A DNA stretch of 64,000 nt from Lepidodermella squamata (GCA_047495785.1 JBLDXI010000019.1:2232001-2296000); one strand, 5' to 3'; shown: positions 23,866-61,040, counted from the stretch's first letter. Notes: generated from the letters alone by a model not told the origin. A program made the numbers and translations.

Positions 23866-26800
23866 TCATTCGACGTAGCGCGCAAGCCGCAGCCGCGGTA
23901 TGATATTCATCGACTGCAGTTCCTGGAACAGCAATTTACACGCGTACGGCATTTTCACGGACGCGATCGACTTGGACGACTTGCAGTACTGGCACCAGCC
24001 CGAGTAGCCGATCAGCCCGCACGTCGAGCAGATATCGACGTCGAACGCGTCCGATGAGAGCATGAGGCGTTCGAGGAGCAGCAGACTAGAACCGTAGCCG
24101 ATGAGGCAGTCGCGTTCCATCTCGCCGAGTCGGAGGCCGCCCTCTCGAGACCGGCCCTCCGTCGGCTGGCGGGTGAGCACGGCGCGCGGGCCGCGAGATC
24201 GCGCGTGCATTTTGTCCATGACCATGTGTTTCAGCTTCTGGTAATACACCGGGCCCATGAAAACGTAAGAAGGCAGCGGCTCGCTAATAAAATCGAAATC
24301 AATTTCTGTTTAAAGATTTTAAATAATTTAAAAATAATTATTTAATAATTCAAATATATCGATATTTTCATGAATTTTAAAAATTAGTTTTTAAACATTT
24401 TCAATCTATTTTCAAATAAATTTAATTTTCAAATAAAAAAATTAAAACTTGTATTTAAAAAATTGAAAGAAAAATCAGAAAATATTGATTTTTTTTTTAA
24501 TTCTAATGGATTTGCAGCCTAATCAATCGAAAATCGATTCCAAGGTAAACTCACCCAGTGATGCCAGAGGTGAGAAAATCTTTGCCGAGGTAATTAAACC
24601 CGTTTCTAAGCAGATCTTCCGCCATATCATCCACCTTACTGCCTCCGAAGCAAGTTCCGTACCGGAATTTGCCCTCCAAGACACCCGCTTTGCCGGAATG
24701 AAGCTCTTTCAACTTCCCAACCGTCTGGAAAAAAATTATAAAAATTTGCCAATAAAATTGGTAAATTTACCATTCGACTAGGATAGCCGTGAGGGTTCAT
24801 GATCAAATCAGCGCAAATGCCCAGGTCGGAAAACGGCATATTTTCCTGGTTTATTATAAGCCCAACAACACCCTTTTGACCGTGGCGCGACGAAAATTTA
24901 TCGCCCAGCTCCGGTCGTCGAGTTTGCCGCATTAGCAGCTTGATTAGACAGGACTCCTCCTGGTTTGAGGTCAAAATCACCCGTTCAACATAGCTAGGCT
25001 CGATTCCTTTGTACGTAACTGCGACTTCTTTGTAATCCTGAGCCTGGTCGCCGATTGGGCCGGGTTGCTCGGCCGTAGCCGTGGCTAGACTGGTCACAAC
25101 AGGGGCGTATTTATTGACAAGAACCTGGCGATTTTCGACCCGCTCGCCCGGGGCGGCGATTCCGTCCGTATCTAGGACAGAATGACGCCAAATCGGCTTT
25201 CGTGTCTGCGAATCAACCATCGGACCCATGATTTTGTCAAAAGTTTGATTCGCATATCGTTTCATGATTACAGACTGCTTTTTGTACACGATACAGCGGC
25301 CGAAACCGCGGTCAAGCGACGCTTTGTTCAACATCAACGCGTCTTCGATATCGTAGCCACTGTAAGACATGACTGAGACAATTGCGTTTTGACCGGCTGG
25401 TAACTGCTCGAAGCCGATCAGCTCGATAGTTCGAGTTTTGACCATCGGGGCTTGGGGATAGGCGAGGAGGTACAGCAACGTGTCGATTCTACAGCGCTGA
25501 TTGTAACCAATCGTGCCCATGGCTTGTTTACCCATAGCACATTGGTAGGTGTTACGAGGTGACTGGTTGTGGTGAGGGTACGGGATCAACCCGGCACAAA
25601 CGCCCAAAATAGTGAAAGGCTCGATTTCCAAATGTGAGGTATAACTGGGAAATTTACAAAATTAAAATGTAAAAATTCCACCTTAATTTTTTCTTCATTT
25701 TCGATGACTTACTCGGCAATATCCTTTTCATACATCGCAATATTAGCATCATCGGCTTCATTCACGTCCAAGTACTCGATTAACCCTTCGCGAAGAAAAT
25801 CTTCAAAATTTCTGAAAAATATTAAAAAAAAACATTTTTATTTCCAAAATATGTTTTCATGGACGAGACAAAAAGCCAAGAGATATTTCAGGATTCAACA
25901 AAGAAGGTCTGTGATCACTGTAATTCAAGTTCATCAAAGAAAGTGCGTAGATCAACGAATTTAGGGCAGGACTCATAGCAGCTAGCATGCCTAGAAATTG
26001 AGCAAAAAGCTTCTCGCCGGCGAACATCGGCGCAAATCCCTCGAAAACCTGCACGAGTTGAAACGAAATAACAGGCAGCCAGCAGGCGAAATGCGCTAAT
26101 TGAATTAACAGACACATTTTTGTAAATTCCCGCGTTCTTCGAGTTGCAGGAATAATCCGAGGCGAATTAATGCTATCTCCAACCGAAAATTTCAGCGAGT
26201 AAATTTTGAAGATTATACGCAAGTAACATAGCGGGAATAACATGCCGGGGAAAACGATGATAACTAGGAACAGTTCAAGAGCTGCGTATCCTTTAAGGTA
26301 GGCGCACATCGACTTTTCATAAATCGTACATTTCCCACTCGCCGGGTCAAGATCGTAGAAGAAAAGAAGCGAAAAATTCAGCATGAAAGGGACAGTCCAA
26401 AGCAGGAAAACCAGCGCGATTTTCGTGATTACTTTCGCGTCTCGAAACGGATTTAAAACCCAGGGATGAATTGTTGCGAAAAATCGTTCAATAGCCAGGA
26501 CACAAAGACATAGCGCGACAACGCCGGGTAATTGGACTTGAAATAACGGCAAAATTTTGCACAGCAGCTGCGACTCAAAGACCCATTTATCAGTCCAAAT
26601 TTGGATAACATTGATTGGAATGTTGACCAAAGACCAGACAAATTCGGCGAGGACGAGGGAAATCAGGAACGGGTTCGGCCTCACCGCCCCGAAATAGCAC
26701 TTATATCGTACGAAATTGATGAAATTCGCGAAATTAACGGCGATTACGATGATGAAAATGACGAAATACGCAGCGGTTAGCAGACATTTTAGCCGAAAAT

Positions 26801-29215
26801 CAGGGTGTGCAAGGTGTTCGGTCATATAATCGGCGAAATCGTCAGAGACCAGCATGGTTATTCAAGAAAATTAGGTTGCAAGAATAAATGAAAGTAAAAA
26901 TTGGCTGTAAGTGAGCGCCGGCGCAGTAGTAAACATCCGCTGTCGATTTTTAAGGTGGATGAGGAAGTGAGTGGCTCGCCATATGGTCACGCAAGTAGTA
27001 AGTGAGCGAAAAATTAGACGGCGCGCGCGCGGTCAAATTAGGTAAATTGAGCCGCAGAAAAACAAAACTCGAGTATATCAAAAGAATACAGCCGTAGTTG
27101 TAGCAACAAACCTGAAGCCTTTCGCTAGTTGGTCGATGTGCTCGCTCGTAACCATTGGTTTGCCATTTTCGACAATTATGTACGGCCTGTTTTTAGAAAC
27201 AACAAGTAAATCAAAAACGCATCAGCATTTCACAAATAGCAGGTGAAATTTCTAACCACATTAGGGCTAAAATCACCGGAAACTATCCTTTCAGCAACAG
27301 TATTCATAAATTTTACGACAGATTAAAAATCAATAGTTATGATTTCGGCCTTTAACAGGCAAAATTAAAAAAAATCCTCCCTAAATTTCAAATTTGATTG
27401 GAGCCAAAATATAAATGAATTTATTTCTGACCTGACAAGACGGCCATCGTCGCAGGCAATCATAACGACTCGATACCGTTCGTCCTTCGTTATCGACACA
27501 AATTCATGAATCCGACCTTGCCGACGTAGTTTTCGCAGCTGCCAGATCAAATCAGTCGGATCAGCCGTCACGCCCAGTAATTGCCCATTAACAAAAACCT
27601 GCCAGTTGTGTGGGGCATGCAGTTCATCCGCATCAATCACATTCAGATGTTCGACGCCGAGAGCGTAACAAAGTCTCACAACCGCAGCCGTGTCCATATC
27701 AGTGGTTACGTGGGTCATTAGCGCCAGATTTTTGACAAGACCACAAGCTTCACCCTCAGGGGTATCAGCCGGGCAGAGAATGCCCCATTGAGAGGGTTGT
27801 AACGACCGAGGGCCAGCGACTTTCCTCGTTTTTTCGAACTGACTCGTAATTCGAGTCATCATACCGAACGCGGCGATGAAAGATAGGCGAGATAACACCT
27901 GAGAAACGCCAACTCGCTCCATCTTGAAACGTTTAATCGTCCAATTTCCGGTTGAAATCGCGTTTGCAAGGCCTGTTGTGATCAAATCTTGCCGCACATG
28001 CTTTACAATATCAAATTGAGCGGCGCGAGGTTTCGGAATGGTCATATCAGCGATTCGTTTCAACTCGGAGTTGAATCGTTTAAACAAATCTTCGAAAAGC
28101 AGGGCAACCAATTGACCCGGCATTTCAAGTCGTTTATTACCGTAATAATCTCGATCATCGACATAGCCGTCCAACTTCGCCATGATAACCCGCCGAACCA
28201 TGACTCCGATGTAGGCAGCTTTCGGCCGGAAATCCCAGTTGATAACTGGAACGTTTGGTAATACGACTGTATGGAGTAACTCCCGAGCTTCTTCCGCCTT
28301 GGTCGATCGGCGATAACCGCCCGGAAATTGAGATGGGCGAATTTTAGTGCCGAGGTGGTTCAACGCTTGCTGTTGCGTGAACACACCCAAAGTTCGACAT
28401 TCTTCCATAGACGCGACCAGTTGTTCGGCAATTCGATCTTCCCAGCCGACTAGTTTGACGAATTCAAGATCAGATTCAACCCCCATAGCCTTGAAAACCA
28501 CCACAATGGGTAGCGGTTGGGCGAAGGAGTTGTGCTTCAGATAAAATTTCCCATTTTTCGTGATTAAATCAGTACGAGATTTTCGTTCATGGGTCGAACT
28601 TGTTACGCAGCAAAACGGGGTGTCGTCTTTCGAACTGATTTCTACAATCATTCGATTTCGTTGAAGTTGTTCCTGAATCAAAACAACCCGCTCCGTCCCT
28701 CGCACGATGAAATAACCTCCAGGGTCGTAAGGGCATTCGTATAATTTCGCTTGTTCAGCTTGAGTTTTGCCATTAAGGGCACATTTGCAAGAACGAAGCA
28801 TGATTGGAAGTCTACCGATGGGCAACTCGTTTCTGCAAACCAGCTGATTGCCGCGCATGTATTCAACATCGACGTAAATAGTCGCGGAATAGGTCAAATC
28901 ACGCAACCGGCATTCGTGGGGTGAGACTGGTCGCGTTATATTAAAGCCCTCTTCAACATCAGGCGAGCCAACGTAAATGTTTTTGTACTTGAGATAAAAC
29001 GATGGATCAGCATCACTCATAATTTGGCTATTCGCGTTCATTATATTTTTCATCTCGACGTTGACGAAATGATCGAACGAGTCGATGTGTTGTTTGACCA
29101 AGCCACGAACTTTCAAAAAAGCCGGTACCAGTTTCCATTTCTCCTCGATTTCTTTGATCGGTGCTGCAAGCTCAGCCGCATCGGGCTTCGCTTCACTTTT
29201 CACAGCCTCCGTCAT
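23866..29215 (-). CDS. POLR3B: RNA polymerase III second-largest subunit RPC2 (6 exons)
   Basis: [92 protein letters not shown] small exon 27112..~27188 ([10 protein letters not shown]...) is missing from the ORF track. The first in-frame ATG is 29215. Confidence 0.97.
25857..26855 (-). CDS. Intronless class A (rhodopsin-like) GPCR nested in POLR3B intron 2, same strand
   Basis: Seven hydrophobic helices; FLISLVLAE (TM2), W.F...[15 protein letters not shown] (DRY-equivalent), [12 protein letters not shown] (NPxxY-equivalent). Confidence 0.85.
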   Translation of the reverse strand: MLVSDDFADYMTEHLAHPDFRLKCLLTAAYFVIFIIVIAVNFANFINFVRYKCYFGAVRPNPFLISLVLAEFVWSLVNIPINVIQIWTDKWVFESQLLCKILPLFQVQLPGVVALCLCVLAIERFFATIHPWVLNPFRDAKVITKIALVFLLWTVPFMLNFSLLFFYDLDPASGKCTIYEKSMCAYLKGYAALELFLVIIVFPGMLFPLCYLRIIFKIYSLKFSVGDSINSPRIIPATRRTREFTKMCLLIQLAHFACWLPVISFQLVQVFEGFAPMFAGEKLFAQFLGMLAAMSPALNSLIYALSLMNLNYSDHRPSLLNPEISLGFLSRP

Positions 29216-29400
29216 GCAACGATTTGCTGTCACATTTAATAACTTCTAAATTAATGTCAAATTTAGTTCATCTAACCTTCGAATATCCAGCAGAAAAAAC
29301 AACAGAATTGATTATGATAGAATCTTCTTTCATTTTTATTAACTTCTCCGTTTCCAGCACTTCTGATTTCACACAAAATGCGCAAGTGAAAGTATCTAAT

Positions 29401-29772
29401 TTACTCCGACTCGACGTTCATCGTCTGCTGACCTTTGAAGTCGACGCAGGGCACATATGTGACGAGGGTGTACAGCTTGTGAGGCGAGTCTTCGTCTTCG
29501 TTACGCTTGCGCGCGAGACGGACGCGAACGCGCCGAGGGACGTTCTTCACACCGCGAGACCAGAGGTGCTTGTTAAGGCGGATGTCGACGCGGACGTCTT
29601 CAGTGCCCATCGCCTGGCGAGCGAACTTGCGGACGATCTTGATGGTTTGTGGGGCGCGGCGCTTGAAACCAACACCGTGCACGCGCTTGTGCAGGTTGAT
29701 GGTGTACTCGCGGGTCACAACCTCCTTGGTGGAGGACTTCTTTTTCTTCTGGTCCTTATCGCCCCTTTTCAT
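29401..29772 (-). CDS. RPL31: 60S ribosomal protein L31 (eL31)
   Basis: [25 protein letters not shown]...[37 protein letters not shown]. Confidence 0.98.
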
Positions 29773-30793
29773 CGTTTATAGATAAAAGGTCCTATGAAAA
29801 GCGAATGTAACATTAAAGAGGGTAATTAAAAAATAATAAAGTGACAAGTAACACACTTTGACTGACATCAATTCAATCAAGATCATCACAAGGAGATGGA
29901 CGAGATCTAATATGAGCGACCTGATCTAAGAATGTTATCGATAATAAAATAAAAAATCAAATCATCCCAATAAAAACTCAAGGTACTTCTATGGAATATT
30001 GTCATAACCGGCGAAACACAGACATTGTGTTTCAAATCATTAAGTAAATGGGGCCTTTCCTTAGAATGCCTCAATAAGCAATAGTGAAGCTTTCACAGCC
30101 TTCACAGTCATGAAAGACATCGCAGAAAAGCTGAAAAGGTTTCACGCGGTCATAAAGTTAGTTCCATCCTCCATCAAATGCAGTGACGTTGAGACCTGAG
30201 GACGATTAGCAGCTTTATCGGTGGTTTCTTGCTTCGAGGATTATGGAATCAACAGAGCACTACCGCTTGTGTCATCCAGATGAAAGATTCAGGTAAAGTC
30301 GGCGACAAGACAACCCTTACTCAATCCCATTGCATCGCGGCAAGCGACTCCGACTTCGCCTCTCAGGATCCCCATCGCGCAATCGCGGCTTTTCAAAAAA
30401 CTAAAAACGTGGTTCGGGATCAGCGGCTGGTTTCGAATTTAATTTCTTTAAAATTATTATTAACTGAAAATAAATATTTTTAAATAGTATTTCAATAATT
30501 TTATTTTTATTTAGCGGGCTTTTTTTTCGTCGCCGCGCCAACAAGCGGTTTGTAGCGCGCAGGTAGCTTGCTTTTGCCGCTCCCGCCTCCTGCCTCTCGC
30601 CACCCTTACCTGCGAGAAGTTTTTACTGTTGAGACCGTTGAAATTATTGACACTGTTACATGTAAGCTGAGAGTTGAAACAGATTCTATGCATTTCTACA
30701 TGCCTGAGTATTTTCTCTTCCATTAATTATCGTGTTATTGAATTTTACATCTAATTTTTAACATTTCTCTTAACATTTTCCTAGCGCTTTACG

Positions 30794-31306: not shown

Positions 31307-33361
31307 ATGGAAGATCTTGAATACGAACTGAGCACCATAACTTGCGACATCGATGATGTTGAAGAGGAAATTCAAGTTCTTCAGGACAAGCGACGTGCGT
31401 TGCATGAACGGAAACGCCAAATCGAGCAATTACTGAAGCAAAAATCACAAGAGCAAGCTCCGTCCTCCTTGGCTCAATATGCTCAGGAGAATTTCCCATG
31501 GTCGGAAAAATTGCGGAAAACTGCTCTTGATACTTTTAAAATTGCGAATTTCCGAGAGCTGCAGTTACCATGCATTAACACTACTCTAAGCAAAAAGGAT
31601 TGTATTTTGATTATACCCACCGGCGGCGGAAAATCATTGACCTATCAACTTTCTGCTGTTATTTCGACGGGCTGGACCCTTGTCATTTCACCCCTCATCT
31701 CGCTGATGGAAGACCAAGTCATGATTATGCAGAAATTGAATGTTGACGCCCGCCTGCTAGCTGCTGCGACTTCAAAGGAGGAACAAAAATCAATCATGGA
31801 CGACATGGCTAATGCGGTACGCAAAGAACACGCATTTTGCTTTGGATGATGTCATTCTTTTGCAGAAATCCTCACTGAAATTGTTATACGTTACGCCCGA
31901 ACGATTAGCCAAGTCGAAGAAGTTCATGTCCAAACTTGAAAAGGCTCATCAAATGGGTATTTTAGCCCGCATTGCTATCGATGAGGTTCATTGCTGTTCG
32001 CAGTGGGGCCACGATTTCAGACCTGATTATAAATTTCTTGGTATATTGAGGCAACAGTTTCCAGGTGTTCCGCTGCTTTGTCTAACCGCGACTGCTTCCA
32101 GTGAAGTTATTGAAGACGTCAAAACTGTGTTGAATCTCCCTGCCTCAACTGTCTTGTACCGGGCATCATTCAATCGGCCTAATTTGAAATATGAAGTTTA
32201 CGAAAAATCATCACAGGGAGCAGCTTGTTACGATGCGATGGCTAATTTAATCACGCGAGAATTTCCCGGTCAGTCAGGGATTGTTTACTGCCTATCGAAA
32301 AAGGACGCAGAAGAAGTTGCGCATGAATTGGGAAGTCGAGGTCATCGAACTGGGATTTATCACGCTGATATCAATCCTGCTCAGCGTTCTCAAATTCACC
32401 AAAAATGGATTTCAAATAAAATAACGGTAAAAATCCTCGAATGCTGAAATAAATTCTTTGTAAACTGAGTTATTTCCCACAGATTGTTGTTGCTACCATT
32501 GCTTTTGGTCTTGGCATTGATAAGCCCGACGTCCGTTTTGTGATTCATCATTCATTGAGTAAATCATTGGAAAATTACTACCAAGAGAGTGGTCGATGTG
32601 GACGAGATGGAAACCCCGCTCGGTGTATTCTCTTCTTCCGATTAGCCGATGTCTTTCGAGTTTCCTGCATGGTCTTTCACGAACGCAATACGCTACCTAA
32701 ATTGTACGCTATGCTTCGATATGCTTGTTCAGTCGACGTTTGCCGCAGAAAATTGATGGCTGAAATTTTTGGTGAAAAGGTTGGCAAATTCTTCATCTAA
32801 TTTTTCGTTTCAAACCTGATTTTTATTCAGGTTCCTCAATGCAATTCTCAATGCGATATTTGTTGTGGTCGATTTTCGAATCTCAAAACTCTGGACTGTT
32901 CAAGTATTGCCGCCGAAATTCTTCCGGAATTGTTTCCTACCGGGCAAAATAATTCGAATCGCTTGACGTTCAACAAAACCCAGGATAAACTTTCAAAACT
33001 CAAATCTGTAAAATCTCTCGGCCTTGGTCAGGCTGAAATCGAGCGAATCGTCTCGCAAATGTTGATGGATAGATTGATTAAGGAGGATTTTCACTTCACA
33101 CCTTACAGCACTATAAGCTATCTCGTCCCAACTCCTTCAGGCGCGAGGCATCTTGAAAAAGGCACATTATCGGTAAAAATTCTAATCGCCGATAAGAAAA
33201 TTGCTGAAAAACCGGCCGCTGTGAAAAAGCGTGAAATTAAAATAACCGAGCCTAAAGAAGCGGCTTTCGGAAAATCAGAACCGGTTATTAAAATGCCGAA
33301 GAGAAAACCTGCGACGCCTGATAAGATCGAAATAAGCGACGACGATCTCATATTCGAATAA
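31307..33361 (+). CDS. RECQL: RecQ1-type DNA helicase (4 exons)
   Basis: [73 protein letters not shown], Zn site CRR...C...[17 protein letters not shown]. Confidence 0.95.
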
Positions 33362-33405
33362 TTCGGGGCTTGAAATAAATATCCTTTCTTACTAGAATTT
33401 TTAAA

Positions 33406-36400
33406 ATGGATAGTTATAGTTTGGAAGATTTGGCTCGCAGAGCTGAGCGGATGGCCGAAAGTTTGCAGCAGCGTCAAACTGGTGCGGCCCTAGCTCAATC
33501 GGGTCTTCCGAATGGGGCTGATGCGGTTGATATGATGCGACCGATTGCAAGAAATCTACGCCAAATGCGAGAAGCTGGTTCGAGATTGTCGAACCGCCTG
33601 CAACAGGGCGGTGCTTCACCTGGTCTAGGGCCGTCTAGCGGGGCCGAAAATATGTCGCCGCTATCTGAGGAGACCGGAATTCGGTTTTTGGCTCGAGCCG
33701 GAGTTGACGTGAGAACTCTGACCTCAGATTCTGGCGATCGACTTCGGGCTAAATTGGCCGAGGCGACTGGTCAATCCGGGTCAGGATCCGGGCCGATGGT
33801 CAGCGATGAATCGGTTTCATTCTGCGATATCAAGGGCTGGGTCGAAAAGAATGAAAGTGCGACGATTGCGTCGATTTTGGAGGAAACTCGTCGCAGGACG
33901 TCCGAGGAATGTGTCGAGCGGTATTGGGCTGTTATGGAGTCTGAACAGGCGCGTTTGAAGCGGAAGTTGAAGGAAACGTTGACCGCGACGTTATCAATGC
34001 CGGCTGCTTCTGCGGCTCCGTTGACCCCGGCTGGGGGCTATAACCCATTGGCAGATGTTAGCATTCTTCAAACTTCGACTAACGCGGCGATTTTCCACAA
34101 TCGCTTAGATTCAGATTACTCAAAGATTGTAAGTTTGTTGAAATATTGGATTTGAACCATGATTAACTTGTGATATATTTTTAAGGTGGTTGACTACATG
34201 ACTGGCGCTGTTCCGTCTCGCCAAGGAACTGAAGGCCTTGTGGCTAGATTTCGAAAGGCTGCTGTCGAAAATCAATCTGAGGTGAGCATTTTTAGTCACT
34301 AGATTTACATTCTTAACAGTTTCTATACCTATTTCTGACTTGGCTTGGAACTGATAAAAATATCAAGTAATTAATAACATAAGCCTGCATATCTAAAAAT
34401 TGTAAAAATTGCTGCAAGATGCGTCGATTCACGCGTAAATGAGCTAGGCGGAATTGAACTCGTTTTTTTCAGTGCAAAAGACATGGCGTGCGCATAGTAG
34501 TACTATTCCAGTAAACAAGAACCATTCATGCAACTGCGCGCTCTATACTTGTGTGCATTTCGGATATAGATGAATTCATTGCATCAATCTGGGTTTCATC
34601 GTTTTCATTTAAATTTCCCCTCGACCGCGCTCAGTAGACACAAGAAATATTCCTTGTTAAAACCGTTGAGAAAAAGGTTAGGGATATAGTTAATCGGCGT
34701 ACACTTGTAAGAGCTTGCGAAGACGGTCAGATTTAGGCATTTGTGATTTTTGCTAATTTCGTGCTTATAAATAAATCGGGCTTAAAATGCATTTTACATT
34801 TTTACATTCTCAAAAGCCAACTTCGAATGATCTAGAATGATCTGAAATCTGCCGGGAATAAAGGATGCCTAACAATTCGTTCCACTGACAAATAGCAGCT
34901 GAAATATGCTTACTTGCGTATTTTCCGAGGCGAATTGCGGAAAAATTAGCTTGCTTCGCTAAAAAACGACATTTAAATCTCATAGAACAGCATCGAAGGC
35001 CCTTGGCTTTAAGAAATTACATCTATGATTGTGTAATTGCGCATTAATCAACTTCACGATTTTTGCTGCTTCGAACCAATCGATACAATTTGAGCAAAAA
35101 GAATTTGAAAAATTTACGATTTTTTTTCAAATTGGCCTACACGTTACGGAATTGTTTCAGTGGCAGACACTTTTGAGTGCCGGAAAAAAGTCGGAGGACT
35201 GTCATCAACTGAATATTTGAACTGTTCAATATCTCCTGAATTTATTAATTTTGTGTGATATAACTTAATTTTCAATTTTTATTTTCCCCTCAGCTATCAG
35301 TTGATGTTTGGGACTATTTTGCTGACACTCTCATTCCTCATCTTGTCGTTTCTGGTTCGGCAAAATCCGAGACGATTCAACGCCTTCGATTCGAACCTAC
35401 CTTACTGCTCGAACCCACCGGCCTTCTGTCTCGAAATATCGAGTATCTGGAAAAGCGATTTTACCGCCGAATTTCTCAAGAAGTCTCGCATTCACCTGAC
35501 GGCGGTGTCGTAGCAAATTCTGGCCGTCTCGAGCCTGGCTCCCTCGGCACAGTTCGTTGCTACGTCAGCCTGCACCCGCCGCCTGCCGGGTGTGAGGTCA
35601 ACTCAGGCCAGCCGGTGTGGTGTTACGCCTACTATTGCATGCGATGCGGCGACACTGAAGCCGCGGCTCGTTTGCTGAGCGCGATTGGTGAACGCGCGCT
35701 GGGTGACTATTTGACATCAGACGATACGAATCGCGCAAGCCAGGAACGAGTCGCCCTCCTGCAGACTTACGTTTCAAGGTAATGTTCCGAATAATTAATA
35801 AATTAATAAAATTAATGTCTCAATGAGTAAAAATTATTGGCCGGGCGTATAGTTAACTCATAGAGAACGAAATGATCAAAGGTGACACGTGCGGATTCGC
35901 AATGGAAAAGAAACATAGAGAACAGAAGTACTTTCATAATTTCATTGTTTTTCCATTAAGAGGGATTTTTTAACTTTTTGAAAATTCTTCAATTTCAACG
36001 TTTTTAAGTCATATTCATTCAAAACCATTTTATTTGGGTATTTACTCTTGGTAACTCTTAAAAATGTTCGTGCTTCTGATACCCTGCAACTATAATATGG
36101 TAATCCTTGTTAGCTACCGATAGCAGTGAATAAAATGGCTCGAAATGAATTTTCAATGGAAAACAGGTGTTTAAATTTTCGTGTTTTTAAGTTTCGTGAT
36201 TTCGGAAAAAAACAAAAATTTGAGCCACAACGAAATATAAGCCGTATACAGTACTAAATAGCGCATGTAGCTAATTTCTCGCCCACTAAATCAAACTCTT
36301 TCCTCTGGATTCCTGCCTCGACTTTCGCGACTTCAGGGTCCAGGGTCAGCTTTGAAGCTTGATTTCACGAGTGAAAACATGGAGAGGTTAGAGGCGACCT

Positions 36401-45413: not shown

Positions 45414-46504
45414 ATGGAAAATTTAAGTGATGAAATTGCCGAAAAATTAGCCTCAGCCCTAGTCGTGAATAAGGCTGATATTTCCGATGACGATGTTTCG
45501 CTGAGTGATCAATTTCAAGTTTTTGATCGTTCTAAAGAGCCGATAGCGAACAGGTGGTACATTCTACCAGTCTCGGGCCACACACCCCTCGCCCGGGTCG
45601 GCCATGCCGCAGTTTTTCTAGCCCCGAAAACGGTCGTCTCAGTCGGCGGCGCCAATCCAGACGGCACTTTTTCAGAGATTAACGTGTTGGATTTGGACAC
45701 TTTAAGGTGGGAGCTGATGATCCCGCCTGGGTTCAGGCCCCGCTATGAACACCTTGCATTCACCTCGCACTCGGATCCGGATAAAATCTACGTATTCGGC
45801 GGGGCGGATATGGTTGAGAATATGAATGACATTCAGGTGGTTGAAATTAGCCAAAAATCTGCAGTCACCGTGCAGGATATCAAGGGCACGCCGCCGGCGC
45901 CTAGGACCTACCGGGCGCAGTCCGCCTTGAATGACAAAATGTACGTATTCAGCGGCGGGAAGCAAGCGGCTGACCCCATTTCGGACAAGCAAATTCGTGT
46001 TTTCGACTTGCCATCGAAAACTTGGTCGACAATAGACGCGAAGGGCCAGGCGCCTAAATCGCGCCAGGGTCACTCGTGCGTGGCTTTGAGTCACGAAAAT
46101 CGAAATTATCTAATCATCCACGCCGGCATGGCTGGTAGTTCCATTTACGACGACCTACACATTCTTGATCTGGACTCAAATAATTGGTCTGGCGAGGTTA
46201 AATTCAGCAAATCCAAGCCGAGACCCAGTGCTAGGGCCGGTCATGTTGCCCTGCCGTATAAAGACGGGAAAATGGTGATTTTCGGCGGGTTAGGCCGCGA
46301 TAACGTTGTTTCAAATGATTTGTGGTTATTTGGCGTCGGCGATAAATCGTGGCGGGAAATCAAGGCGGAAGCGATTCTGCGGCTTGTATAATCACAGGGC
46401 TAAATAACTCGAAATTTGGCGATTATCTGCTGATAACAGGTGGCATGAATACGGAGGGCGATGTTTTCAGCGATTGTTTCTTATTCCGGCTCGACATGGC
46501 TTGA
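45414..46504 (+). CDS. RABEPK: Rab9 effector with kelch motifs; last blade frameshifted
   Basis: WY.L..SG..P.ARVGH, VGGANP, PRYEH, VFGGA, VFSGG...ADPISD. The main frame stops at 46391, but DSAACII...YLLITGGMNTEGDVFSDC continues in the -1 frame to TGA 46504. Confidence 0.85.
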
Positions 46505-47138
46505 TTTTGCGGCTCAGTTTTTTCTATTGTTTAGTCATCTTGCCAATATTAATTGTGATAAAAACACGTGGTTTTCTGCGCACAGTCTTGTGATAAAATC
46601 AAGAGAAAATATTGATATACTACAAATATCGGCTCTTAAGCCTTGATATACCCAATCAACTCTTTTTGCGTTTCTCGTTTATGATTGTTATGGACACTCG
46701 TATAATCCTCGAATACATTTTTGGCTGAGAAGAATTGAATAAAATCGCTTTTTGTATTTTGCTGACTATTTTCGTGGGTAAATTCTTGCACTGATTTTTA
46801 GCTGCAAATGTTTTTTACTGCGATGCTGGTTCCTGATGTCACGTGAGTTTTCGACCGAATCAATACAAGAGCGTGATAAAGAATTATTTACCAAACCTAT
46901 TGAGACTCGTCGAAGAAAAAACGCCGAAGAAAATATATGAGTGATGAGAGACATACCTATATCAGATTTCAGCTACAGTTAATTGGCTCAGACAAATTAT
47001 TGTTTAGCCCCTTTATAGAGATATCGCCTTATTTTATTCGAATTTTGCTGGTACCGTTAACTGGGATGACTTTCGCGTTTGGGGGTCACTTTGCCATGCT
47101 AAAATGGGGTGGCTTCGGCATAATAACCTAATAGGCGA

Positions 47139-48840
47139 AAGCTCATCAACAAAGACATATGGGACAGAGGGAAAAATCGTGAGAAAAGTTCAGAAAAACA
47201 AATCTTTTTTTTATTATTGTGTTAGTTCCAAGCTCCAGTTCCAGCTCTAGTGCTTAGAATCGAGTTGTTGAAGATTGCTGATGGCTGATGTTGAAGATTT
47301 TGGTTTTTTTGTTCCGTTCATGTGCGTTTACAATATAAATGAAAAAATATTGAAAATTTCGACTTTATATTCCGGCATTTCACTACACTTATCAGTTAAA
47401 CTTGGACTCGAATTCAACATTATTTCCGGATTTTTCAGGTCACAGTTTAGGATAAAATAAGACATTTGTCTGATGAAAAAGTCGCACCCGAAAATTATCC
47501 CAGTGTCTGAGTTACACTTTCTATTTTTGTTTTATTTAAACTCAGCTATAGTTAGTTGAAGCGCGTGCATGATATTTATAATTTCCTTTCGCTACCCCTC
47601 AAAATAACGTTTGATTTCTTCGCTGGGAAACGATGGCAAAGGAAGAGCTCAATTCCGATGACTACACCTACGATTACGGTCATGGCGACGAAGATACGGG
47701 TGATTTCGAAGCTGAAAAACCCGTCTACCCGGTTCACTACTCGCAATTAGCTTCAAATGGTACATTGAGTTCAATAAAACAGGTTATTTACCTTTGCGTG
47801 TGTGTAAACAATTTTGCCCGGTATAATACTGTCGTGATCACGTTGGCTCTTATGCTTGTATACTAATAGACGAGCACGACTTTTACCCAGAAAAACAATT
47901 CCTATTTATTGTGAAAATTTCTTCGTGCGCGTTGATCATCACAACTAAAAATTTGTCGAGTACAGGAATAAGATAACTCGGCTGTATATTTCATTTTATT
48001 ATTATTATTTTCATGGAAACTCGTCCTCATGGCGTCGGCTATTTCACTTTCTCAGCTGACGTAACTGAACGCAGCAGCTAAACAAATTGGACGAACAGGT
48101 ATATATGAAAAAGAGAAAGAAAAAAGCCGAATAATCAAGATTATACTTATGCCACAAAAAACCCAAGTCTCGACTGATTAATGCAAGTGATTGCGTGTTT
48201 TTTCTGCTTAATAGACCGCGGATCAACGGCGTAGAGCCGCCGGGGTGAAAGCGTCACGTGAGGCTCTTAAACAAGCTAGAAAGGCGTAAAAAAACAGCTA
48301 CCTGAGACTAGCGAGAATCCTGGGCCAAACGAAGAGGGAAAAGTCGAAATTGAAGACCCTGAAATCTCGAAAACTATCGCGAAAGACACCCGAAAACTCA
48401 TCAACAAAGAGACTGGGACGAGGGAAAAATCGTGAGAAAAATCGACGAAAAATATAATTTTAATTTTTGTTTCAGTTCCAAGTTCTAGTTCCAGCTCTAG
48501 CGCTTGGAATCGTGTTGTGTTGAGGAAAGGCGAGGCGAGCGCCCGACCGAGTTTGCACCGCTGACATCGTATAAACGGCCAACGTCATCAAGTGGCGGCA
48601 AAAAATGAGCCACAGGTACGCAATTTATTTTCGCCCAATTTTAGGTGACCATTTTTTATTGCTGTAATTGCAGGATTTTTTTCGTGTTGCGTTCAAGTGC
48701 GTTTTTCACGACTGTACACGTGTCACGAAGGAAAGCGCGCAACGACTGCTGATAAATAAAAATGTCCTGAGCCAGATAAAAATAAACAATTTCATCTTTT
48801 TCTATATTCTTATAATAATTATTGAAGCGAATAAAGAACA
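47139..48840 (+). pseudogene. Two partial genomic duplicates of the CCDC174 3' end
   Basis: 47545..48840 aligns with ~21745..23040 including introns and 3'UTR, with lost acceptors and deletions. 47139..47330 is a shorter, more diverged copy of the last exons and UTR. Confidence 0.9.
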
Positions 48841-51596
48841 TCTGCTGGTTTTTGACCCTCATATGAATCACGGCAATTATTTATTTTCGGTTTTTTCCCA
48901 CTGATAAGGCCTGGTAGCAGAATCCTTGAAAAAGTGAATCGCGCGCAAAGGTCACATGATAAAAAGTTTCGCCTTATCGATTTCCGTGCGGCTTGTTATC
49001 CAGGCTATTGATAAGAAACCCTGCCAAATGTTTACTTTTAACTGATAAGCCCTTCTGGTGTGGTTGACTCGAGCCAAGTGTGCGAAAAAAACCAGAAGTT
49101 GAAATGAAAAAAATATTCTAATTTATACCTGTAGGCAGTAATAAAAACAGCTTATCAAAGGCTATATAGAAAAAACGCGCAGGCTTTTGCGTGTTGAGTT
49201 CGCCTCAGCAGCAGAATCTCGCACCTTGTTTTCTATCCGGCTCATGTGAATTTTCACTGTGTGCCGTGTAGGCGTTCGCACACTAATTAACACCATCAAG
49301 TCAGTAAATAAAAAAAATGGCGAACTCCCTGGATACTCACTCCCTCTCTCTCGCTCAGCAGCAGCAGCAGCAGCAGCGAACTTTGTGACCTCGCAATGAA
49401 GAAAAAAGCGGAAAAATTACATAGTTTTCATTTTTTTATTAAATATTTTTTTGTCCAAATGTGTAAGTCCAGAAATATACAGAATAATATGCTTATTATA
49501 TAGCAATGAATACGAATATGAATATGAATGATAATAATTATTATATAACAGCGTGCTGGCCCATTGCGTCCACAATATTTTAATATAATTATAATAATAT
49601 TTTACGCATAAGTATATTCGCAATGTCTCATCAGTTCATTACAACTGTGTGCAGCTCAGCAAGAAAAAACGTGTGAATTTTTTTCATCATCATCTCAAAC
49701 GTGCGTTGAACGTTTTTTTCAGCTGTACATTATACAATCGCCTGATCATCAAAATAACATTTTTCATATGACGAGACACACAGAGCGAGCGAGCGAGAGA
49801 AGAAAGAGACGCGAGGCCAAGGCAGATTTTTCATCTTCAAAAATGCTAATGCGAGACTTCAAGTCCCAAATTCATAGCGAAAGAGGTCACGACACGATTT
49901 TTTTTCATCAATTTCGGTGCACAAATTAACAGAATCATCATGAAGTTTGTTGCCATTCCGAATAGTTTTTTTTTGATAATTTATCATCAACTTCATTCGA
50001 TTGCGCTGGAGAGAGACAGCAAAAAAAGAAACACGAAAAAACCATAAACTCAAAAAATCATCATCATCGCCATCATCAGCCAACAAATTTTATCCATTAA
50101 TTTTGCTGTTAATTCAGGTATAATAATAATAATAAGAATAATAATAATAATAGCGTTGAAAAACTAGAGGAATTTTGGACACTTTTGGTCGCCGACACGC
50201 AGGAAAGAAATGAGGGCAGGACACGCCGAGGAGTTTTTGCACATTCGCAACAATTTTATGCTCCGCACATACATACACTTTTATGGCTTTTCTTATACGA
50301 AGCTATAAAAACAGAATAACCGCCCTAATACGGTCAGTTATTATAGTACGCTTGTATGTTTGTACCTAACTATAAGCATTATTTCCATCGTTCTATATTC
50401 CTTGCCGTGGCGGTGGAGCTGTCAAGACTTGGGACTACAACAGCAGCTGGCTGCAATAAATTGAAGAGCCGTTTCACACACTTATAATATACGCAGGTAT
50501 GCACATACACATACACACCGGCCTGCTCATCTCTCTCTTATAAGGCGAAAAGATGTTATAACAGCGCGGAGAGACGAGATCCACCACATTTCCTACGCGT
50601 GTAGTTTTTTCCCTTAAGTAATACACATTGATTTGCGTTGTAATCTATTTTCAGGTGCTTGCCAAGACACGAGCGAGCGAGCGAGAGGAGGCGGCGGGAG
50701 AGAGAGACAGAGAAAGAAATTGTGAAAGACAACCAGCGAATTGTATCATTTTTCACTTTTTCGAAATCCAAAGCAAGCGGAAAATATTCATTCGAAGCGA
50801 GTTGCCCTCATTTCATCCGAACATTCGTTAATCATTACAAACATACTGGCAAATAGTTAGGATATTTTTTTATAAAAGAGAAAGGGCTCACAGTTTTAAT
50901 GAACGATGAAAAAAGGCTAAGAAAAAACGAATTTTTGTGATCCAAAAAAAACAAAGAAAACACAAAGAACTTTGTACACGTATATTTTATTTTTTTGTAA
51001 ATATATTTATTTATCGATATATGATTTTTCAGATTATATCTACACAAAAATCACGATTTTTGCCGACGAAATATTGTTGCTGTTGTAGAAGAAAAAGAAG
51101 AACATGAAGTGGATTTGCAGGTTTTTGTTTCACAAAAAAACCGGTAGTTGTATTAAAGCAGTAGTTTTTTCACGGAAACTCGTCGCGCGAGGAGGCAAAC
51201 AACAATCAAAAAGAAGGGAAATATATATATTTTTTTTCGATAACATTAATAATAATGATAATAGCAGCACAGGAATGACGCGTTATTATAAGGTGGATCA
51301 TTATTTGCAATACAAGTGCTTGTCTCAATCAGATCAACAAGGTGATTTTTCATGTTTCATCATCATTTTCTCTACCGGGAAAATTTGCTGAGAAAGAAAG
51401 AACCTTAATAAGTATAAATGATGTGGTTTTTTTTACCGTAACAAGAATAAACGATTTTTTAATATGAACATTAACCGTGACGAGTGCGAAATTGGTGCGA
51501 TTTTTTGAATATTTTTTTCTTCCTGCTTGCATTCAAATCCGAAGAGCCTATAGTCATAATTGTGCTGCCGCGATTAGAAACACTTGATTTTGCTTT

Positions 51597-53572
51597 TCAT
51601 GTAGAAGCAGTTTCGCTTTCGACTAATGCCAAGTTTCGAATTTTCGAAACGACTGGATCCGTATTTTCCTCTTCGTCGTTAGGGTTAGACGCGCCAATAA
51701 CACAGGCGTTGATAATTTCACCGTTGAGTTCGTCGACCGCGAGTTCTTCATCGTCGTCGTATTCAATGGAAGAAGCGTTCGGAATGATTGAACCCGTCGC
51801 CGAGCACGGCGTGATCGAGCCGGTCGTCGGGCTCGGCGTGGCGCGCGTCCCGAAGCCGTTACTGCCCAGGCTTGAGGAGGCGCACGACGACGCCGACGAC
51901 GAGTGCGAGTGCGAAGACGGAGATGACATGGCGTAGGGCTGACCGCCGGCGGCTATCACAACGAGCGAGTTCGGCGGGTACAGGCGGCTTGGCGAGATCC
52001 ACACGGGCACGCAGCACACGGCGCCCGGTACTGCATTCTCACCCATCTAAAAATCAGAAAGAACACAATTTATAAAATCTGCCTTAAAATAATTTTCCGA
52101 GATATTTTTCGTCTGTTAAGTTGAATAATTACCGAATTTCTATACAAGAAACCCACCTCAGGAGAATACTGGCCGAGGCACTGCTGGCATCGACACTGCA
52201 AGAACGCAGCATGAGGTGGGCAGTAAAAAATATTGTTGGGACGTTGAGCTGGCTGGTTGTTATGTTGATTATGGTGCTGTTGCTGCTGGCTGTTGTAGGC
52301 CCTTGGCGGCTGGTTGCCGTTGTAGTGAGACTTTTTGTTGTAGCCGCCCTGGTTATGATGATGCGACTGCGTAGGCCGGCCGTTATTCGAATGCAGAAGC
52401 ATCGGAATGGACGATGTTGATGACGAAGGCGAGTCACGATGGCACGGGGAGCCGCCTTGTTGTTGTTGCTGCTGCTGCTGATGGTGGTGTTGCTGCTGCG
52501 CGTAGTAGTACGCTGCTAGTTGCGGCGGAATCGGAACGTAAGTTGGAATGAACGCCTCGCGCCAGCGCAGCTCGTAGTGAGCCAACCGCGCGATGACATC
52601 GAGCGCATACTGCCGCTCCTGATTCATGAGGCAGACTGCGGAGCGGTCGATGATCTGTTCGAGCAGTTTCAGGTAGTCGTATTTGCGCGGGTCCGTCGGC
52701 GCGAAGTGGTTCTGAAGGTAGCCGGAGATTTGACGCGCCTGCTCGGGCACGTCCATGAAGTCGATGAAGAACCGGGTGCACATGTATTGCTCCTTTTTGC
52801 CGAAGTTCTGCGCATCGGCCGGCCGGTACCCTTTCACTAGCAGATCACAGTACCGCAGCAGTCCGCCGCCTCGAATGTTTTCGGGTGAGCATGTCGCAAT
52901 CAACTTATTTTTCAAATGACTATACGCTTCACTGAAGCTTCCGTAAACACTCTCCGCGACGATTGTCGGGAAGAAGTGCTCACTGATGGGCCTTGATGAT
53001 ATTGAATAGAAGGTCAGCAGAGGATCGAGCATTATTTGAAAAGAATCAACAGAGAACTGATATTCTCGCACCATTTGACAGACGAATTTGAGCTCAACAT
53101 TGTTAGGGCGCAGGCCGAGGGAGATTAAACTCCACCGGTCCCGGTCATTCCAGATCTTGATCATTTTATCAACATAAGCACCAGCCAGATTGTTTTCGTT
53201 AACACGAGCAGGATCAGTGTCGAGGGGTAGAAATTCTCGAAGGCATTCAAGAACAGCTATCCGAATAATTTCAAACTCAGCCTCGCCGGCAATGCTGAGC
53301 TTGTAGATGATATCGAGGTCATTGAATGTAGGTACAGTATCTTCGCCAAGAATGTAACTCGCCGCCCCGCCGTTCAACCGAATTTCCTCGATATGAATGC
53401 CATACTTGCAAATGCGGTCTCGTAGCATGACGATGAAATGCCGCAAGGAGAACTCCAACGTCGTAGGAAGGAGCGCCTTGTTCCGGCTGTGAATGAATCT
53501 CCGATCTCCAATGACTGCATCAAGCTTCTCCACCTGGGTGAAAGACAACGTCTGAAAGCGGTTATTAGCCAT
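51597..53572 (-). CDS. TENT5: Terminal nucleotidyltransferase TENT5/FAM46 (2 coding exons)
   Basis: RLNGGAASYIL, FNDLDIIY, AYVDKMIKI..D.DRWSLISL, NVELKFV, FSVDSFQI.LD, IRGGGLLRYC.LL, YMCTRFFIDF, VCLMNQER; intron ~52047..52156. Confidence 0.93.
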
Positions 53573-55011: not shown

Positions 55012-55132
55012 GAGTCCATCCGCAATAAGGGCTGATAACTTGCACATGAGTCTCAGTCGAAATTACATTGTGTCCGGGCTTTTTAAGACAAAAAGCCAAA
55101 CATTTATCAGCCCTTTTCTTGCCGACGGTCTC
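55012..55132. mobile_element. Short MITE-like inverted repeat
   Basis: GAGTCCATCCGCAATAAGGGCTGATAA ... TTATCAGCCCTTTTCTTGCCGACGGTCTC imperfect TIRs. Confidence 0.5.
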
Positions 55133-60400: not shown

Positions 60401-61040
60401 CAATTCCGTTTTTTAGAATAATAATAATAATACGCACGATAACAACATTAGGAATTACCTGCAATGCACCCCTGTAACTACAAAACGTCTTGAGTGTAAA
60501 AATTGCGTGGCAGAGAAATTCACCCGTTTGCCAAAACTTTTCACCGCATATCCCTTGTATATACCGTCAACTATAATAATAAAACTCGTTGTTTGATGAA
60601 GCAACAGCAGCAGAAGCAGCAGCAGCAACATCAACCAAAGTGGAGCGCTGTTTAGCAGTAGTAGTCAGTCAGTCGCAGTTATATTACCAACACATCTTCA
60701 TCATCATGACCTTCATCGGCCGACAACGACGAGCGAGCGAACGAACAACTCGCTTCTTTGTAAGCCGAAAACACACAGTTACTTACACACTAGATTACAA
60801 AGCCGCGCGCGTTGTCTCCTGTTCTAATACTACTACTACTACTACTACCACGCCGCTTAACAAAATTATAATTGTAAACAAGCACTCGTAAAAAAGATTG
60901 TGTTCAACACTCACTCCTCTAGACACATCATATCATCATTAGGCAGCAAAAAGTTGGCCCTGTGTATTTATCTTTTATACTCACTAATCCGTCGTCGTTT
61001 TTTGTTTATTTTAGTCGATTTTTTTTTCGGGTCGAATTTT

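What the first reader, a model, noticed from the sequence alone, without database searches (positions are those of the whole stretch)
25812..27111. Same-strand GPCR filling a POLR3B intron, with its poly(A) signal next to the host 3' splice site
Seen: a 999-nt GPCR ORF occupies most of the 1300-nt intron 2. Its stop is 45 nt from the host acceptor, with an AATAAA between them (25842..25837). An acceptor CTTACAG sits 49 nt upstream of its ATG, and cis-splicing from the POLR3B exon to it hits a stop, so there is no fusion protein. Known: most nested genes are antisense. Inference: GPCR 3'-end formation and POLR3B splicing are mutually exclusive on one pre-mRNA, or the GPCR mRNA is cut out of the RPL31-POLR3B transcript by trans-splicing, i.e. 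an 'intronic cistron'.
Basis: partly seen in the sequence, partly recalled or inferred. Interest (0 to 1): 0.75.

Follow-up and report, generated by a model that had tools for sequence, protein, structure and literature searches.

The report
GPCR gene nested inside POLR3B intron
A complete, weakly expressed receptor (GPCR) gene lies in the same direction inside an ancient intron of the RNA polymerase III subunit gene POLR3B of a small invertebrate; this is a tightly packed example of a known arrangement (a nested gene), and how the inner message is made remains unproven.

Summary
A 332-codon intronless ORF (25857-26855, minus strand) is a class A GPCR. It fills 77% of a 1300-nt POLR3B intron (25812-27111). 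AATAAA (25842-25837) lies 23 nt before the host acceptor AG, and CTTACAG ends 49 nt before the ATG.

A cDNA contig shows POLR3B spliced exactly across the intron. Weak RNA signal covers only 25891-26887, while the other host introns and both ends of this intron have none. So the GPCR probably gives its own low-level RNA.

A mollusc has the host intron at the same codon and phase, so it is ancient. A relative with 89% identical POLR3B has lost this intron and its two neighbours, and no GPCR lies within about 10 kb either side of its POLR3B. The GPCR is a divergent member of a small lineage-specific family.

No read shows a spliced leader at 26904, a poly(A) tail, or truncated host RNA, so "intronic cistron" is untested. 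The 207 nt before the candidate acceptor are GC- and CpG-rich, unlike the neighbouring introns, which favours an own promoter.

Same-strand, single-exon nested genes are well known (29% of Drosophila nested genes are same-strand; VAChT lies in ChAT). Earlier notes of this scan report other same-strand nested genes in this genome. Verdict: real, ordinary in kind, unusually compact; moderate interest.

The parts
25812..27111 (-). POLR3B intron 2 (1300 nt, GT..AG, phase 2 inside an Arg codon AG|A), the host intron
   Evidence: The X1 cDNA contig skips exactly this stretch. The same codon and phase carry an intron in Lymnaea stagnalis. The intron is absent in the relative L010.
25857..26855 (-). 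Intronless ORF of a 332-aa class A (peptide-receptor-like) orphan GPCR, stop codon included
   Evidence: ORF list; Pfam 7tm_1 E 1.3e-19; best solved relatives SSTR2 and orexin receptors, E 1e-13; AlphaFold2 model with pLDDT 87.6 and seven TM helices; Foldseek top matches are peptide GPCRs; weak RNA cover over 25891-26887.
26905..26911 (-). Candidate 3' splice acceptor CTTACAG, a possible spliced-leader site; the exon would start at 26904
   Evidence: Sequence. It is the last AG before the ATG, and the next AG downstream is 204 nt away. The 20 nt upstream are 65% pyrimidine. Its use is not shown.
26856..26904 (-). Putative 49-nt 5' UTR of the GPCR (GC 0.27)
   Evidence: RNA cover reaches 26887 and not beyond (bin arithmetic).
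26905..27111 (-). 5' 207 nt of the host intron, GC 0.47 and CpG-enriched: candidate promoter or outron of the GPCR. It holds two copies of CGCTCACTTAC (27008-26998, 26917-26907) and a GC-rich palindrome (27012-27039).
   Evidence: Composition against the other introns of the gene, which have GC 0.17-0.30. Repeats. Unique in the genome. Zero RNA cover in X1.
25837..25842 (-). AATAAA poly(A) signal of the GPCR, 14 nt after its stop codon and 23 nt before the host acceptor AG
   Evidence: Sequence. By comparison, the RPL31 AATAAA at 29340-29335 has an observed poly(A) site at 29312, 23 nt after the hexamer.
25812..25836 (-). T-rich tract ending in CAG: polypyrimidine tract and acceptor of the host intron, lying where the GPCR's cleavage site and downstream U-rich element would be expected
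   Evidence: Sequence; 80% pyrimidine in the 20 nt before the AG. The dual use is an inference.
27112..27186 (-). POLR3B exon 2 (75 nt)
   Evidence: X1 contig; splice sites.
25713..25811 (-). POLR3B exon 3 (99 nt)
   Evidence: X1 contig.
27432..29245 (-). POLR3B exon 1. The contig's 5' end lies at 29247, on the AG (29247-29246) of a TTTAG acceptor. The ATG is at 29215.
   Evidence: Pfam Rpb2 domains 1-4.
23866..25644 (-). POLR3B exons 4-6 (25644-24771, 24724-24555, 24283-23866) with introns of 46 and 271 nt
   Evidence: X1 contig joints; Pfam Rpb2_6.
29312..29772 (-). RPL31 ORF (29772-29401), AATAAA at 29340-29335 and poly(A) site near 29312, which is 65 nt upstream of the POLR3B acceptor
   Evidence: (a T9 loose end at 29312, and SMART adaptor ends at 29363-29376). 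The same gene order is found in the relative.

Best explanation
This is an ordinary but very compact host/nested gene pair. A functional, single-exon, orphan peptide-receptor-like class A GPCR gene sits on the sense strand inside an ancient phase-2 intron of POLR3B.

Shown:
- POLR3B pre-mRNA is spliced from 27112 to 25811, removing the whole GPCR gene.
- A separate, roughly ten-fold weaker RNA signal covers only the GPCR body.

Inferred:
- The GPCR is transcribed from its own start in the GC/CpG-rich 207 nt at the 5' end of the intron.
- It is probably processed at the CTTACAG acceptor (26904). If so, a spliced leader would be added there, as earlier notes of this scan report for other genes of this genome.
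- It probably ends at its own AATAAA, with cleavage at about 25815-25830.
- Host transcripts must read through that signal. The expected cleavage zone, the U-rich tract and the host branch point and acceptor share the last ~45 nt. On any single host transcript, cleavage would therefore preclude splicing. In bulk RNA only the spliced POLR3B form was detected.
For: - The ORF is intact. Pfam 7tm_1 scores 71 bits.
- N1.50, R3.50, W4.50, P5.50, CWxP, N7.49, Y7.53 and both disulfide cysteines are kept.
- The AlphaFold2 model is a confident 7TM fold, and Foldseek matches peptide receptors.
- The host splice across the gene is in a 3531-nt cDNA contig. Run X1 is cDNA, because SMART adaptor and poly(A) ends are seen on RPL31.
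- Bin arithmetic gives zero depth in introns 1, 3, 4 and 5, at 25812-25849 and at 26888-27111. Depth is 1.6-6.5 in every bin of 25850-26887. The weak RNA is therefore neither unspliced host pre-mRNA nor DNA carry-over.
- The 5' 207 nt have GC 0.47 and 17 CpG against 10.9 expected. The other introns of the gene have GC 0.17-0.30.
- A GPCR is expected to be cell-type specific, and POLR3B ubiquitous (general knowledge).
- The intron is ancestral. Lymnaea has introns at the same three codons and phases. The gene therefore sits in a pre-existing intron, as in the usual origin of nested genes.
- Same-strand nested genes are typically single-exon (PMC3814207).
Against: - No transcription start, leader, poly(A) tail or strand information for the GPCR RNA was obtained.
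- The contigs over it are short, shallow and carry fold-back joints.
- No promoter motif was identified, and paralogue upstream regions share none.
- The genome is reported by earlier notes to use spliced-leader trans-splicing and operons. The 3' junction also copies a tight intercistronic junction. Co-transcription with the host therefore remains possible.
Confidence: 0.55

Rival explanations
1. Intronic cistron. The GPCR has no promoter of its own. A fraction of (RPL31-)POLR3B pre-mRNAs is trans-spliced to a spliced leader at 26904 and then cleaved and polyadenylated at about 25815-25830. Each GPCR mRNA would cost one POLR3B mRNA, and the choice between cis-splicing and trans-splicing plus cleavage would set the ratio.
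For: - The predicted mRNA (26904 to about 25815) would fill 84% of the intron.
- An unpaired acceptor precedes the ATG, with a yUnAy branch-like TTTAC 26 nt upstream.
- Stop-14 nt-AATAAA-23 nt-acceptor AG mirrors the RecQ to next-gene junction (stop-12 nt-AATAAA-14 nt-AG-10 nt-ATG).
- The POLR3B contig ends on an AG acceptor 65 nt after the RPL31 poly(A) site, which fits operon-type processing here.
- RNA cover stops at 26887, short of 26904.
- Earlier notes of the scan report a spliced leader and several other same-strand nested genes in this genome (not tested here).
Against: - No leader-bearing read was seen.
- The acceptor has a weak pyrimidine tract in a GC-rich context. It lies 49 nt from the ATG, against 10-30 nt for the other unpaired acceptors in the window.
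- The upstream 207 nt look regulatory rather than intronic.
- A receptor tied to the expression of a housekeeping polymerase subunit is biologically odd.
Confidence: 0.22
2. The gene is intact but essentially silent in the sampled animals. The weak signal would be noise, such as stable intron fragments or library artefacts, with no processing interplay with POLR3B at all.
For: - Depth is only 1.6-6.5.
- All seven listed joints over the gene are fold-back ('opposite strands') artefacts.
- Only one cDNA run was available.
Against: - The signal is confined to the ORF plus about 30 nt of 5' UTR. It is absent from 224 nt at the intron's 5' end, from 38 nt at its 3' end and from about 630 nt of the other introns. 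A lariat or DNA carry-over would not give this pattern.
Confidence: 0.15
3. A decaying retrocopy or pseudogene trapped in the intron.
For: - It is intronless.
- It sits on a long branch in the family tree (1.54 changes per column).
- No orthologue was seen in the relative.
Against: - It keeps a 332-codon open frame at only 29-40% identity to its paralogues, with the class A microswitch residues kept.
- There is no poly(A) remnant or flanking direct repeat.
- The only fixed difference to DNA run X2 inside the ORF (26430) is synonymous, GTA to GTC.
Confidence: 0.04

Closest known systems
Same-strand single-exon nested genes (host/nested pairs) of Drosophila and mammals
   Same: A whole protein-coding gene lies inside one intron of a host gene. 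It has the same orientation and a single exon, and it is a lineage-specific, fast-evolving family member. In Drosophila 29% of nested genes are same-strand, and 72.5% of those are single-exon (PMC3814207). Nested genes can provoke exonization and cryptic polyadenylation of host transcripts (PMC3192792).
   Different: Here the intron is only 1300 nt and the gene nearly fills it. The nested poly(A) signal lies 23 nt from the host acceptor AG. The organism is reported by earlier notes to use spliced-leader trans-splicing.
Cholinergic gene locus (VAChT / unc-17 inside the first intron of ChAT / cha-1)
   Same: A single-exon membrane-protein ORF lies on the sense strand within a host intron. Several promoters and alternative splicing generate the different VAChT and ChAT mRNAs, and the arrangement is conserved in nematode, fly and mammals (PMC3053374).
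   Different: From memory (not checked in the cited paper), the shared upstream exon there is non-coding, and the two products work in one pathway. Here 619 host codons lie upstream. Cis-splicing to 26904 stops after 11 codons, so a shared-exon mRNA could not express the GPCR. The two genes are functionally unrelated, and the arrangement is absent in the nearest available relative.
Operons of spliced-leader trans-splicing animals with very short or no intercistronic spacer (C. elegans SL1-type operons, tunicate operons; recalled from memory, not read here)
   Same: The poly(A) signal of an upstream coding unit lies within a few tens of nt of the next acceptor, so 3'-end formation and acceptor use compete. 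The same layout occurs at RecQ to the next gene in this window.
   Different: The downstream acceptor here is a cis acceptor of the host intron, shown to be used in cis. It is not a trans-splice site. No leader was shown on the GPCR.
Somatostatin, opioid, orexin and neurotensin receptor group of class A GPCRs
   Same: These are the best sequence matches (E 1e-13 to 1e-8) and the best fold matches (TM-score 0.67-0.75). The ECL2 beta-hairpin typical of peptide receptors is present.
   Different: Identity is only about 20%. The protein belongs to a small clade of eight sequences from this animal and one relative. It has E instead of D at 2.50, ERF instead of DRY, and NSxxY instead of NPxxY.

Membership tests
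Class A (rhodopsin-like) GPCR, Pfam PF00001 | Match to the 7tm_1 profile above the curated cut-off | tested here: met
   71.1 bits against a cut-off of 30.5; profile positions 19-260 of 260.
Class A (rhodopsin-like) GPCR, Pfam PF00001 | Seven transmembrane helices plus helix 8 | tested here: met
   The AlphaFold2 model has pLDDT 87.6 and pTM 0.86. Helices: 18-54, 62-87, 96-129, 142-159, 181-222, 234-271, 279-312. Foldseek probability is 1.00 to SSTR2, opioid and orexin receptors.
Class A (rhodopsin-like) GPCR, Pfam PF00001 | Conserved microswitch residues (N1.50, D2.50, D/ERY, W4.50, P5.50, CWxP, NPxxY) and the TM3-ECL2 disulfide | tested here: met
   N41, R124 (in ERF), W153, P203, C258-W259-x-P261, N299, Y303, C99 and C176 fall in invariant or near-invariant columns. 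Variants: E71 for D2.50 and S300 for P7.50.
Class A (rhodopsin-like) GPCR, Pfam PF00001 | Ligand binding and G-protein coupling | not testable with these tools
   Orphan receptor; no orthologue of known ligand.
Host/nested gene pair (same strand) | The whole coding unit lies inside one host intron, and the host mRNA is spliced across it | tested here: met
   The ORF 25857-26855 lies inside intron 25812-27111, and the cDNA contig has joint 25811/27112.
Host/nested gene pair (same strand) | The nested gene gives its own transcript with its own ends inside the intron | tested here: inconclusive
   Weak RNA cover is confined to 25891-26887. No 5' or 3' end was mapped, and there is no strand information.
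Cistron of a spliced-leader-resolved operon ('intronic cistron') | Spliced leader joined at the acceptor upstream of the ATG | tested here: inconclusive
   Contigs of X1 stop at 26887, and no loose end was reported at 26904. The exact-protein look-up found no RNA contig.
Cistron of a spliced-leader-resolved operon ('intronic cistron') | Transcribed from the upstream gene's promoter, with no promoter of its own | not testable with these tools
   This needs TSS mapping. The composition of 26905-27111 (GC 0.47, CpG-rich) argues weakly against it.
Cistron of a spliced-leader-resolved operon ('intronic cistron') | Poly(A) signal followed at short distance by the next acceptor | tested here: met
   23 nt lie between AATAAA and the host acceptor AG. 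At the RecQ to next-gene junction the figure is 14 nt.
Cholinergic-locus type (nested ORF expressed through shared host 5' exon) | Host 5' exon(s) spliced to the nested exon give a translatable mRNA for the nested protein | tested here: not met
   Exons 1-2 carry 619 host codons, and joining to 26904 stops after 11 more codons. The GPCR ATG would therefore be a distant downstream ORF.
RNA polymerase III subunit RPC2 (POLR3B), the host | Rpb2 domain series, with the closest named relatives being RPC2 | tested here: met
   Rpb2 domains 1, 2, 3, 4 and 6. Identity is 63-64% to vertebrate proteins named RPC2. The spliced frame is open to the stop at 23866.

The most novel reading that the evidence does not exclude
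In this spliced-leader trans-splicing animal (probably a gastrotrich, according to earlier notes), genes that fill same-strand host introns would be true 'intronic cistrons'. They would be cut out of the host (operon) pre-mRNA by leader addition at an internal acceptor and by polyadenylation right on the host's 3' splice site. U2AF-type and cleavage factors would then compete for one U-tract, and that competition would decide between a POLR3B mRNA and a GPCR mRNA. Together with the other same-strand nested pairs noted in this genome, this would be a genome-wide mode of gene packing.
Probability: 0.2. Interest if true: 0.65.

Novelty: new member of a known kind. Interest (0 to 1): 0.38.

Why it matters
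If the plain reading holds, this is a clean and extreme example of a same-strand nested gene. The nested poly(A) signal sits 23 nt from the acceptor AG that the essential host gene must use. That makes it a natural test case for how splicing outcompetes intronic polyadenylation in a very compact genome.

The comparison with the relative adds an evolutionary point. Three adjacent, mollusc-shared introns are precisely absent there, together with any GPCR at the locus. Either the nested gene entered an old intron in this lineage, or intron loss deleted a gene.

If the intronic-cistron reading were true, it would extend operon-type processing to the inside of introns, in a phylum for which my one literature search found no report of spliced leaders.

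Tried and rejected
- **AG avoidance in the nested gene, as protection against cryptic acceptors.** AG observed/expected is 0.57 in the ORF, but 0.59 in POLR3B exon 1. Synonymous-codon permutation gives P = 0.085. Not special.
- **The loose end TTGAATATTAAA at the RPL31 5' end as the tail of a spliced leader.** With GT added it occurs once in the genome, against 2 for the control. Rejected.
- **Exact-protein look-ups for RNA contigs of the GPCR and of RPL31.** Nothing on record.
- **Word-based homologue search for the GPCR.** No hit at E <= 1e-5. The exhaustive search gave only three hits below 1e-30.
- **Retrocopy signs.** There is no A-run after the 3' UTR and no flanking direct repeats.
- **The repeated CGCTCACTTAC as a genome-wide motif.** 20 copies against 53 for the control. 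It is absent upstream of seven family members.
- **Transposon or repeat origin of the intron's 5' part.** It is unique in the genome.
- **Rfam.** No known RNA family anywhere in the window.
- **A GPCR within about 10 kb either side of the relative's POLR3B.** None in loci L010 and L011 (tblastn). The relative's two nearest family members lie further along the same scaffold, about 12-15 kb from POLR3B, and are orthologues of genes on other contigs here.
- **Comparing 5' and 3' host exon depth for premature termination.** Impossible, because a contig carries one depth figure.


Full report
**Observation**

On the minus strand the POLR3B (RPC2) gene has these exons: about 29245-27432, 27186-27112, 25811-25713, 25644-24771, 24724-24555 and 24283-23866. 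They come from one 3531-nt contig of run X1, which skips 245, 1300, 68, 46 and 271 nt at CT..AC (plus-strand) joints. The splice sites were read.

X1 is cDNA. RPL31 contigs carry SMART-oligo ends and a poly(A) end at 29312.

The 1300-nt second intron (27111-25812) contains an ATG-to-TGA ORF of 999 nt (26855-25857). This ORF is a rhodopsin-type GPCR, Pfam 7tm_1 with E 1.3e-19.

- 45 nt lie between the stop codon and the end of the intron.
- AATAAA is at 25842-25837.
- CTTACAG is at 26911-26905, 49 nt before the ATG.
- There is a stop 11 codons after a hypothetical exon 2 to 26904 splice.

DNA run X2 covers the whole intron in one contig with two differences, so the layout is not an assembly artefact.

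**A note on method**

A local script concatenated the exons once, only to check that the reading frame stays open. The joined model was not saved or sent to any search. All searches used single exons by reference, or the relative's natural uninterrupted ORF (P0001).

**The protein**

The best solved relatives are somatostatin, orexin, endothelin, neurotensin and opioid receptors, at E 1e-13 to 1e-8.

In a 40-sequence alignment the query keeps N41 (1.50), R124 (3.50, in ERF), W153, P203, Y211, C258-W-x-P261, N299, Y303 and the disulfide pair C99/C176. E71 replaces D2.50 and S300 replaces P7.50.

The AlphaFold2 model is confident, with pLDDT 87.6 and pTM 0.86. It shows seven long helices, helix 8 and an ECL2 hairpin. 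Foldseek returns peptide GPCRs.

The genome holds four paralogous loci at 29-40% identity. An exhaustive profile-free search of 1.84 billion representatives found only three proteins below E 1e-30, at 31-34% identity. All three come from metagenome contigs of one relative.

In a maximum-likelihood tree the eight sequences form a clade (100/99). Three pairs are one-to-one orthologues between the two animals. The nested gene is sister to all the others (95/93) on a long branch. Either the nested gene is older than the split of the two animals, or it evolves fast. No orthologue of it was found in the relative.

**Is it expressed?**

Depth figures can be decomposed exactly:
- Bins that contain only parts of host exons equal 46.8 times the exon share. 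Introns 1, 3, 4 and 5, positions 25812-25849 and positions 26888-27111 therefore have zero depth.
- Every bin between 25850 and 26887 has depth 0.8-6.5, from small contigs.

The signal thus coincides with the ORF plus about 30 nt of 5' UTR. This is what a separate, low-abundance GPCR RNA would give. Unspliced pre-mRNA, a lariat or DNA carry-over would not give it.

The contigs are short and carry fold-back joints, which I take for library artefacts. They give no strand, no 5' end and no 3' end. The read tools allowed one call each, so leader use at 26904 and the poly(A) site remain untested.

**Age of the intron**

A protein 89% identical to exon 1 (P0001) lies on two metagenome contigs (L010, L011). 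These share the local gene order RecQ, RPL31, POLR3B, and further Nic96, COX15 and Kelch.

There the POLR3B frame is open for 942 codons. Introns 1, 2 and 3 of the window are precisely absent, while introns 4 and 5 are kept. No GPCR lies in loci L010 and L011, which reach about 10 kb either side of POLR3B.

In the mollusc Lymnaea stagnalis (L012) the gene has introns at exactly these three places. The host intron splits the same Arg codon after TTC, as TTC AG|A.

The host intron is therefore ancestral, and the relative lost three adjacent introns. Either the GPCR entered an old intron in this lineage, or it was deleted together with the intron in the relative. The data cannot decide between these.

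**Signals in the intron**

The 207 nt between the host donor and the candidate acceptor differ from the other introns of the gene.

| Feature | 27111-26905 | Other introns of the gene |
|---|---|---|
| GC | 0.47 | 0.17-0.30 |
| CpG | 17 observed, 10.9 expected | not enriched |

The segment is unique in the genome. It holds a GC-rich palindrome and two copies of an 11-mer, and that 11-mer is not a genome-wide motif. I read this composition as regulatory DNA, which favours an own promoter.

The candidate acceptor has a weak pyrimidine tract (65% pyrimidine in 20 nt). It lies 49 nt from the ATG. The other unpaired acceptors in the window have strong T-tracts and lie closer to their ATG:
- 10 nt before the gene after RecQ.
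- 19 and 10 nt before two further genes.
- 30 nt before POLR3B itself.

At the 3' end the layout is stop-14 nt-AATAAA-23 nt-host acceptor AG. This matches the tight junction RecQ stop-12 nt-AATAAA-14 nt-acceptor AG-10 nt-ATG in the same window.

RPL31's observed poly(A) site lies 23 nt after its hexamer. The same spacing would put GPCR cleavage on the host CAG. By the general 18-40 nt rule, the host branch point must lie inside the GPCR 3' UTR. A steric conflict between the two processing events on one transcript is therefore a sound inference. It is also a property of any same-strand nested gene, here only more acute.

**Mechanism**

My ranking is as follows.

| Reading | Probability |
|---|---|
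| Independent nested gene with its own start in the intron's 5' part, possibly leader-spliced at 26904, with its own poly(A) site; host transcripts read through and splice | 0.55 |
| Intronic cistron processed out of the host or operon pre-mRNA | 0.22 |
| Intact but silent in the sample | 0.15 |
| Pseudogene | 0.04 |

The operon idea for RPL31-POLR3B has indirect support only:
- The POLR3B contig ends on an AG acceptor 65 nt after the RPL31 poly(A) site.
- The adjacency is conserved in the relative, with a roughly 420-nt spacer.
- Depths differ by more than a thousand-fold.
- No leader was seen.

**Comparison with what is known**

In Drosophila 29% of nested genes are same-strand, and 72.5% of these are single-exon. 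This has been explained by selection against mis-splicing (PMC3814207).

Nested genes are known to cause exonization and cryptic polyadenylation of host transcripts (PMC3192792).

The single-exon VAChT ORF inside the first ChAT intron is conserved from nematodes to mammals (PMC3053374). That design does not apply here, because the upstream host exons are coding.

A literature search for gastrotrich plus spliced leader found no relevant paper.

Earlier notes of this scan name the animal as probably Lepidodermella squamata. They report a 30-nt leader at other loci and list other same-strand nested pairs (DHODH in LYRM4, COQ2 in RCC1L, PRPF19 in TAF3). I did not test any of these. They suggest that same-strand nesting recurs in this genome.

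**Verdict**

The thing is a real, probably functional and weakly expressed nested GPCR gene in an ancient POLR3B intron. It is a new member of a known kind, notable for its compactness and for its absence, with the intron, in the nearest relative. The trans-spliced 'intronic cistron' is possible but unsupported.

Noticed in passing
L010:10001-12829 against window 29215-24771: The relative's POLR3B lacks three adjacent introns (window introns of 245, 1300 and 68 nt), all three shared in position and phase with Lymnaea. It keeps the two 3' introns. This is a clean case of concerted loss of neighbouring introns.
   Followed up: yes
window 26201-26214 and 25798-25811: A perfect 14-nt inverted repeat: a stretch in the GPCR ORF is complementary to the first 14 nt of host exon 3, directly after the acceptor. 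Only 3 of 400 dinucleotide shuffles of the region reach 14 nt. The pairing is in the MFE and centroid folds, but the overall fold z-score is only -1.17. It could form only on host pre-mRNA or read-through RNA. Its meaning is unknown.
   Followed up: partly
window 33359-33408 (+): An ultra-short junction between the RecQ-like gene and the next conserved gene: stop, 12 nt, AATAAA, 14 nt, acceptor AG, 10 nt, ATG. The poly(A) cleavage site and the acceptor must nearly coincide.
   Followed up: partly
window 29230-29235 (-): The POLR3B 5' UTR holds a minimal upstream ORF (ATG directly followed by TGA), 15 nt before the real start at 29215.
   Followed up: no
window 45441-63964 against L013: In the relative a tandem pair of GPCRs of the same family lies between the Kelch gene and a zinc-finger gene, on the same scaffold as POLR3B. 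In the window that pair is missing and the block Mnd1 / LZ3wCH / zinc fingers is inverted. A TENT5-like nucleotidyltransferase gene (52070-53572, minus strand) lies in the gap. The orthologues of the pair are on contigs C15 and C54.
   Followed up: partly
window 25891-26887 (run X1): All seven 'opposite strands' (fold-back) joints reported in the 6-kb stretch fall inside the GPCR region, with arms 93-133 nt apart. They are probably artefacts that survive only in shallow contigs, but they were not explained.
   Followed up: no
L010:9705-9830 (+): In the relative, the roughly 420-nt RPL31-POLR3B spacer contains a 41-codon ORF with a hydrophobic core, and AATAAA overlaps its stop. It may be a micro-gene. 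The window's spacer has no counterpart.
   Followed up: no
window 29250-29840: RPL31 contig depth in X1 is about 30,000-110,000, against 46.8 for the adjacent downstream POLR3B. If the two are co-transcribed, read-through must be a tiny fraction.
   Followed up: no
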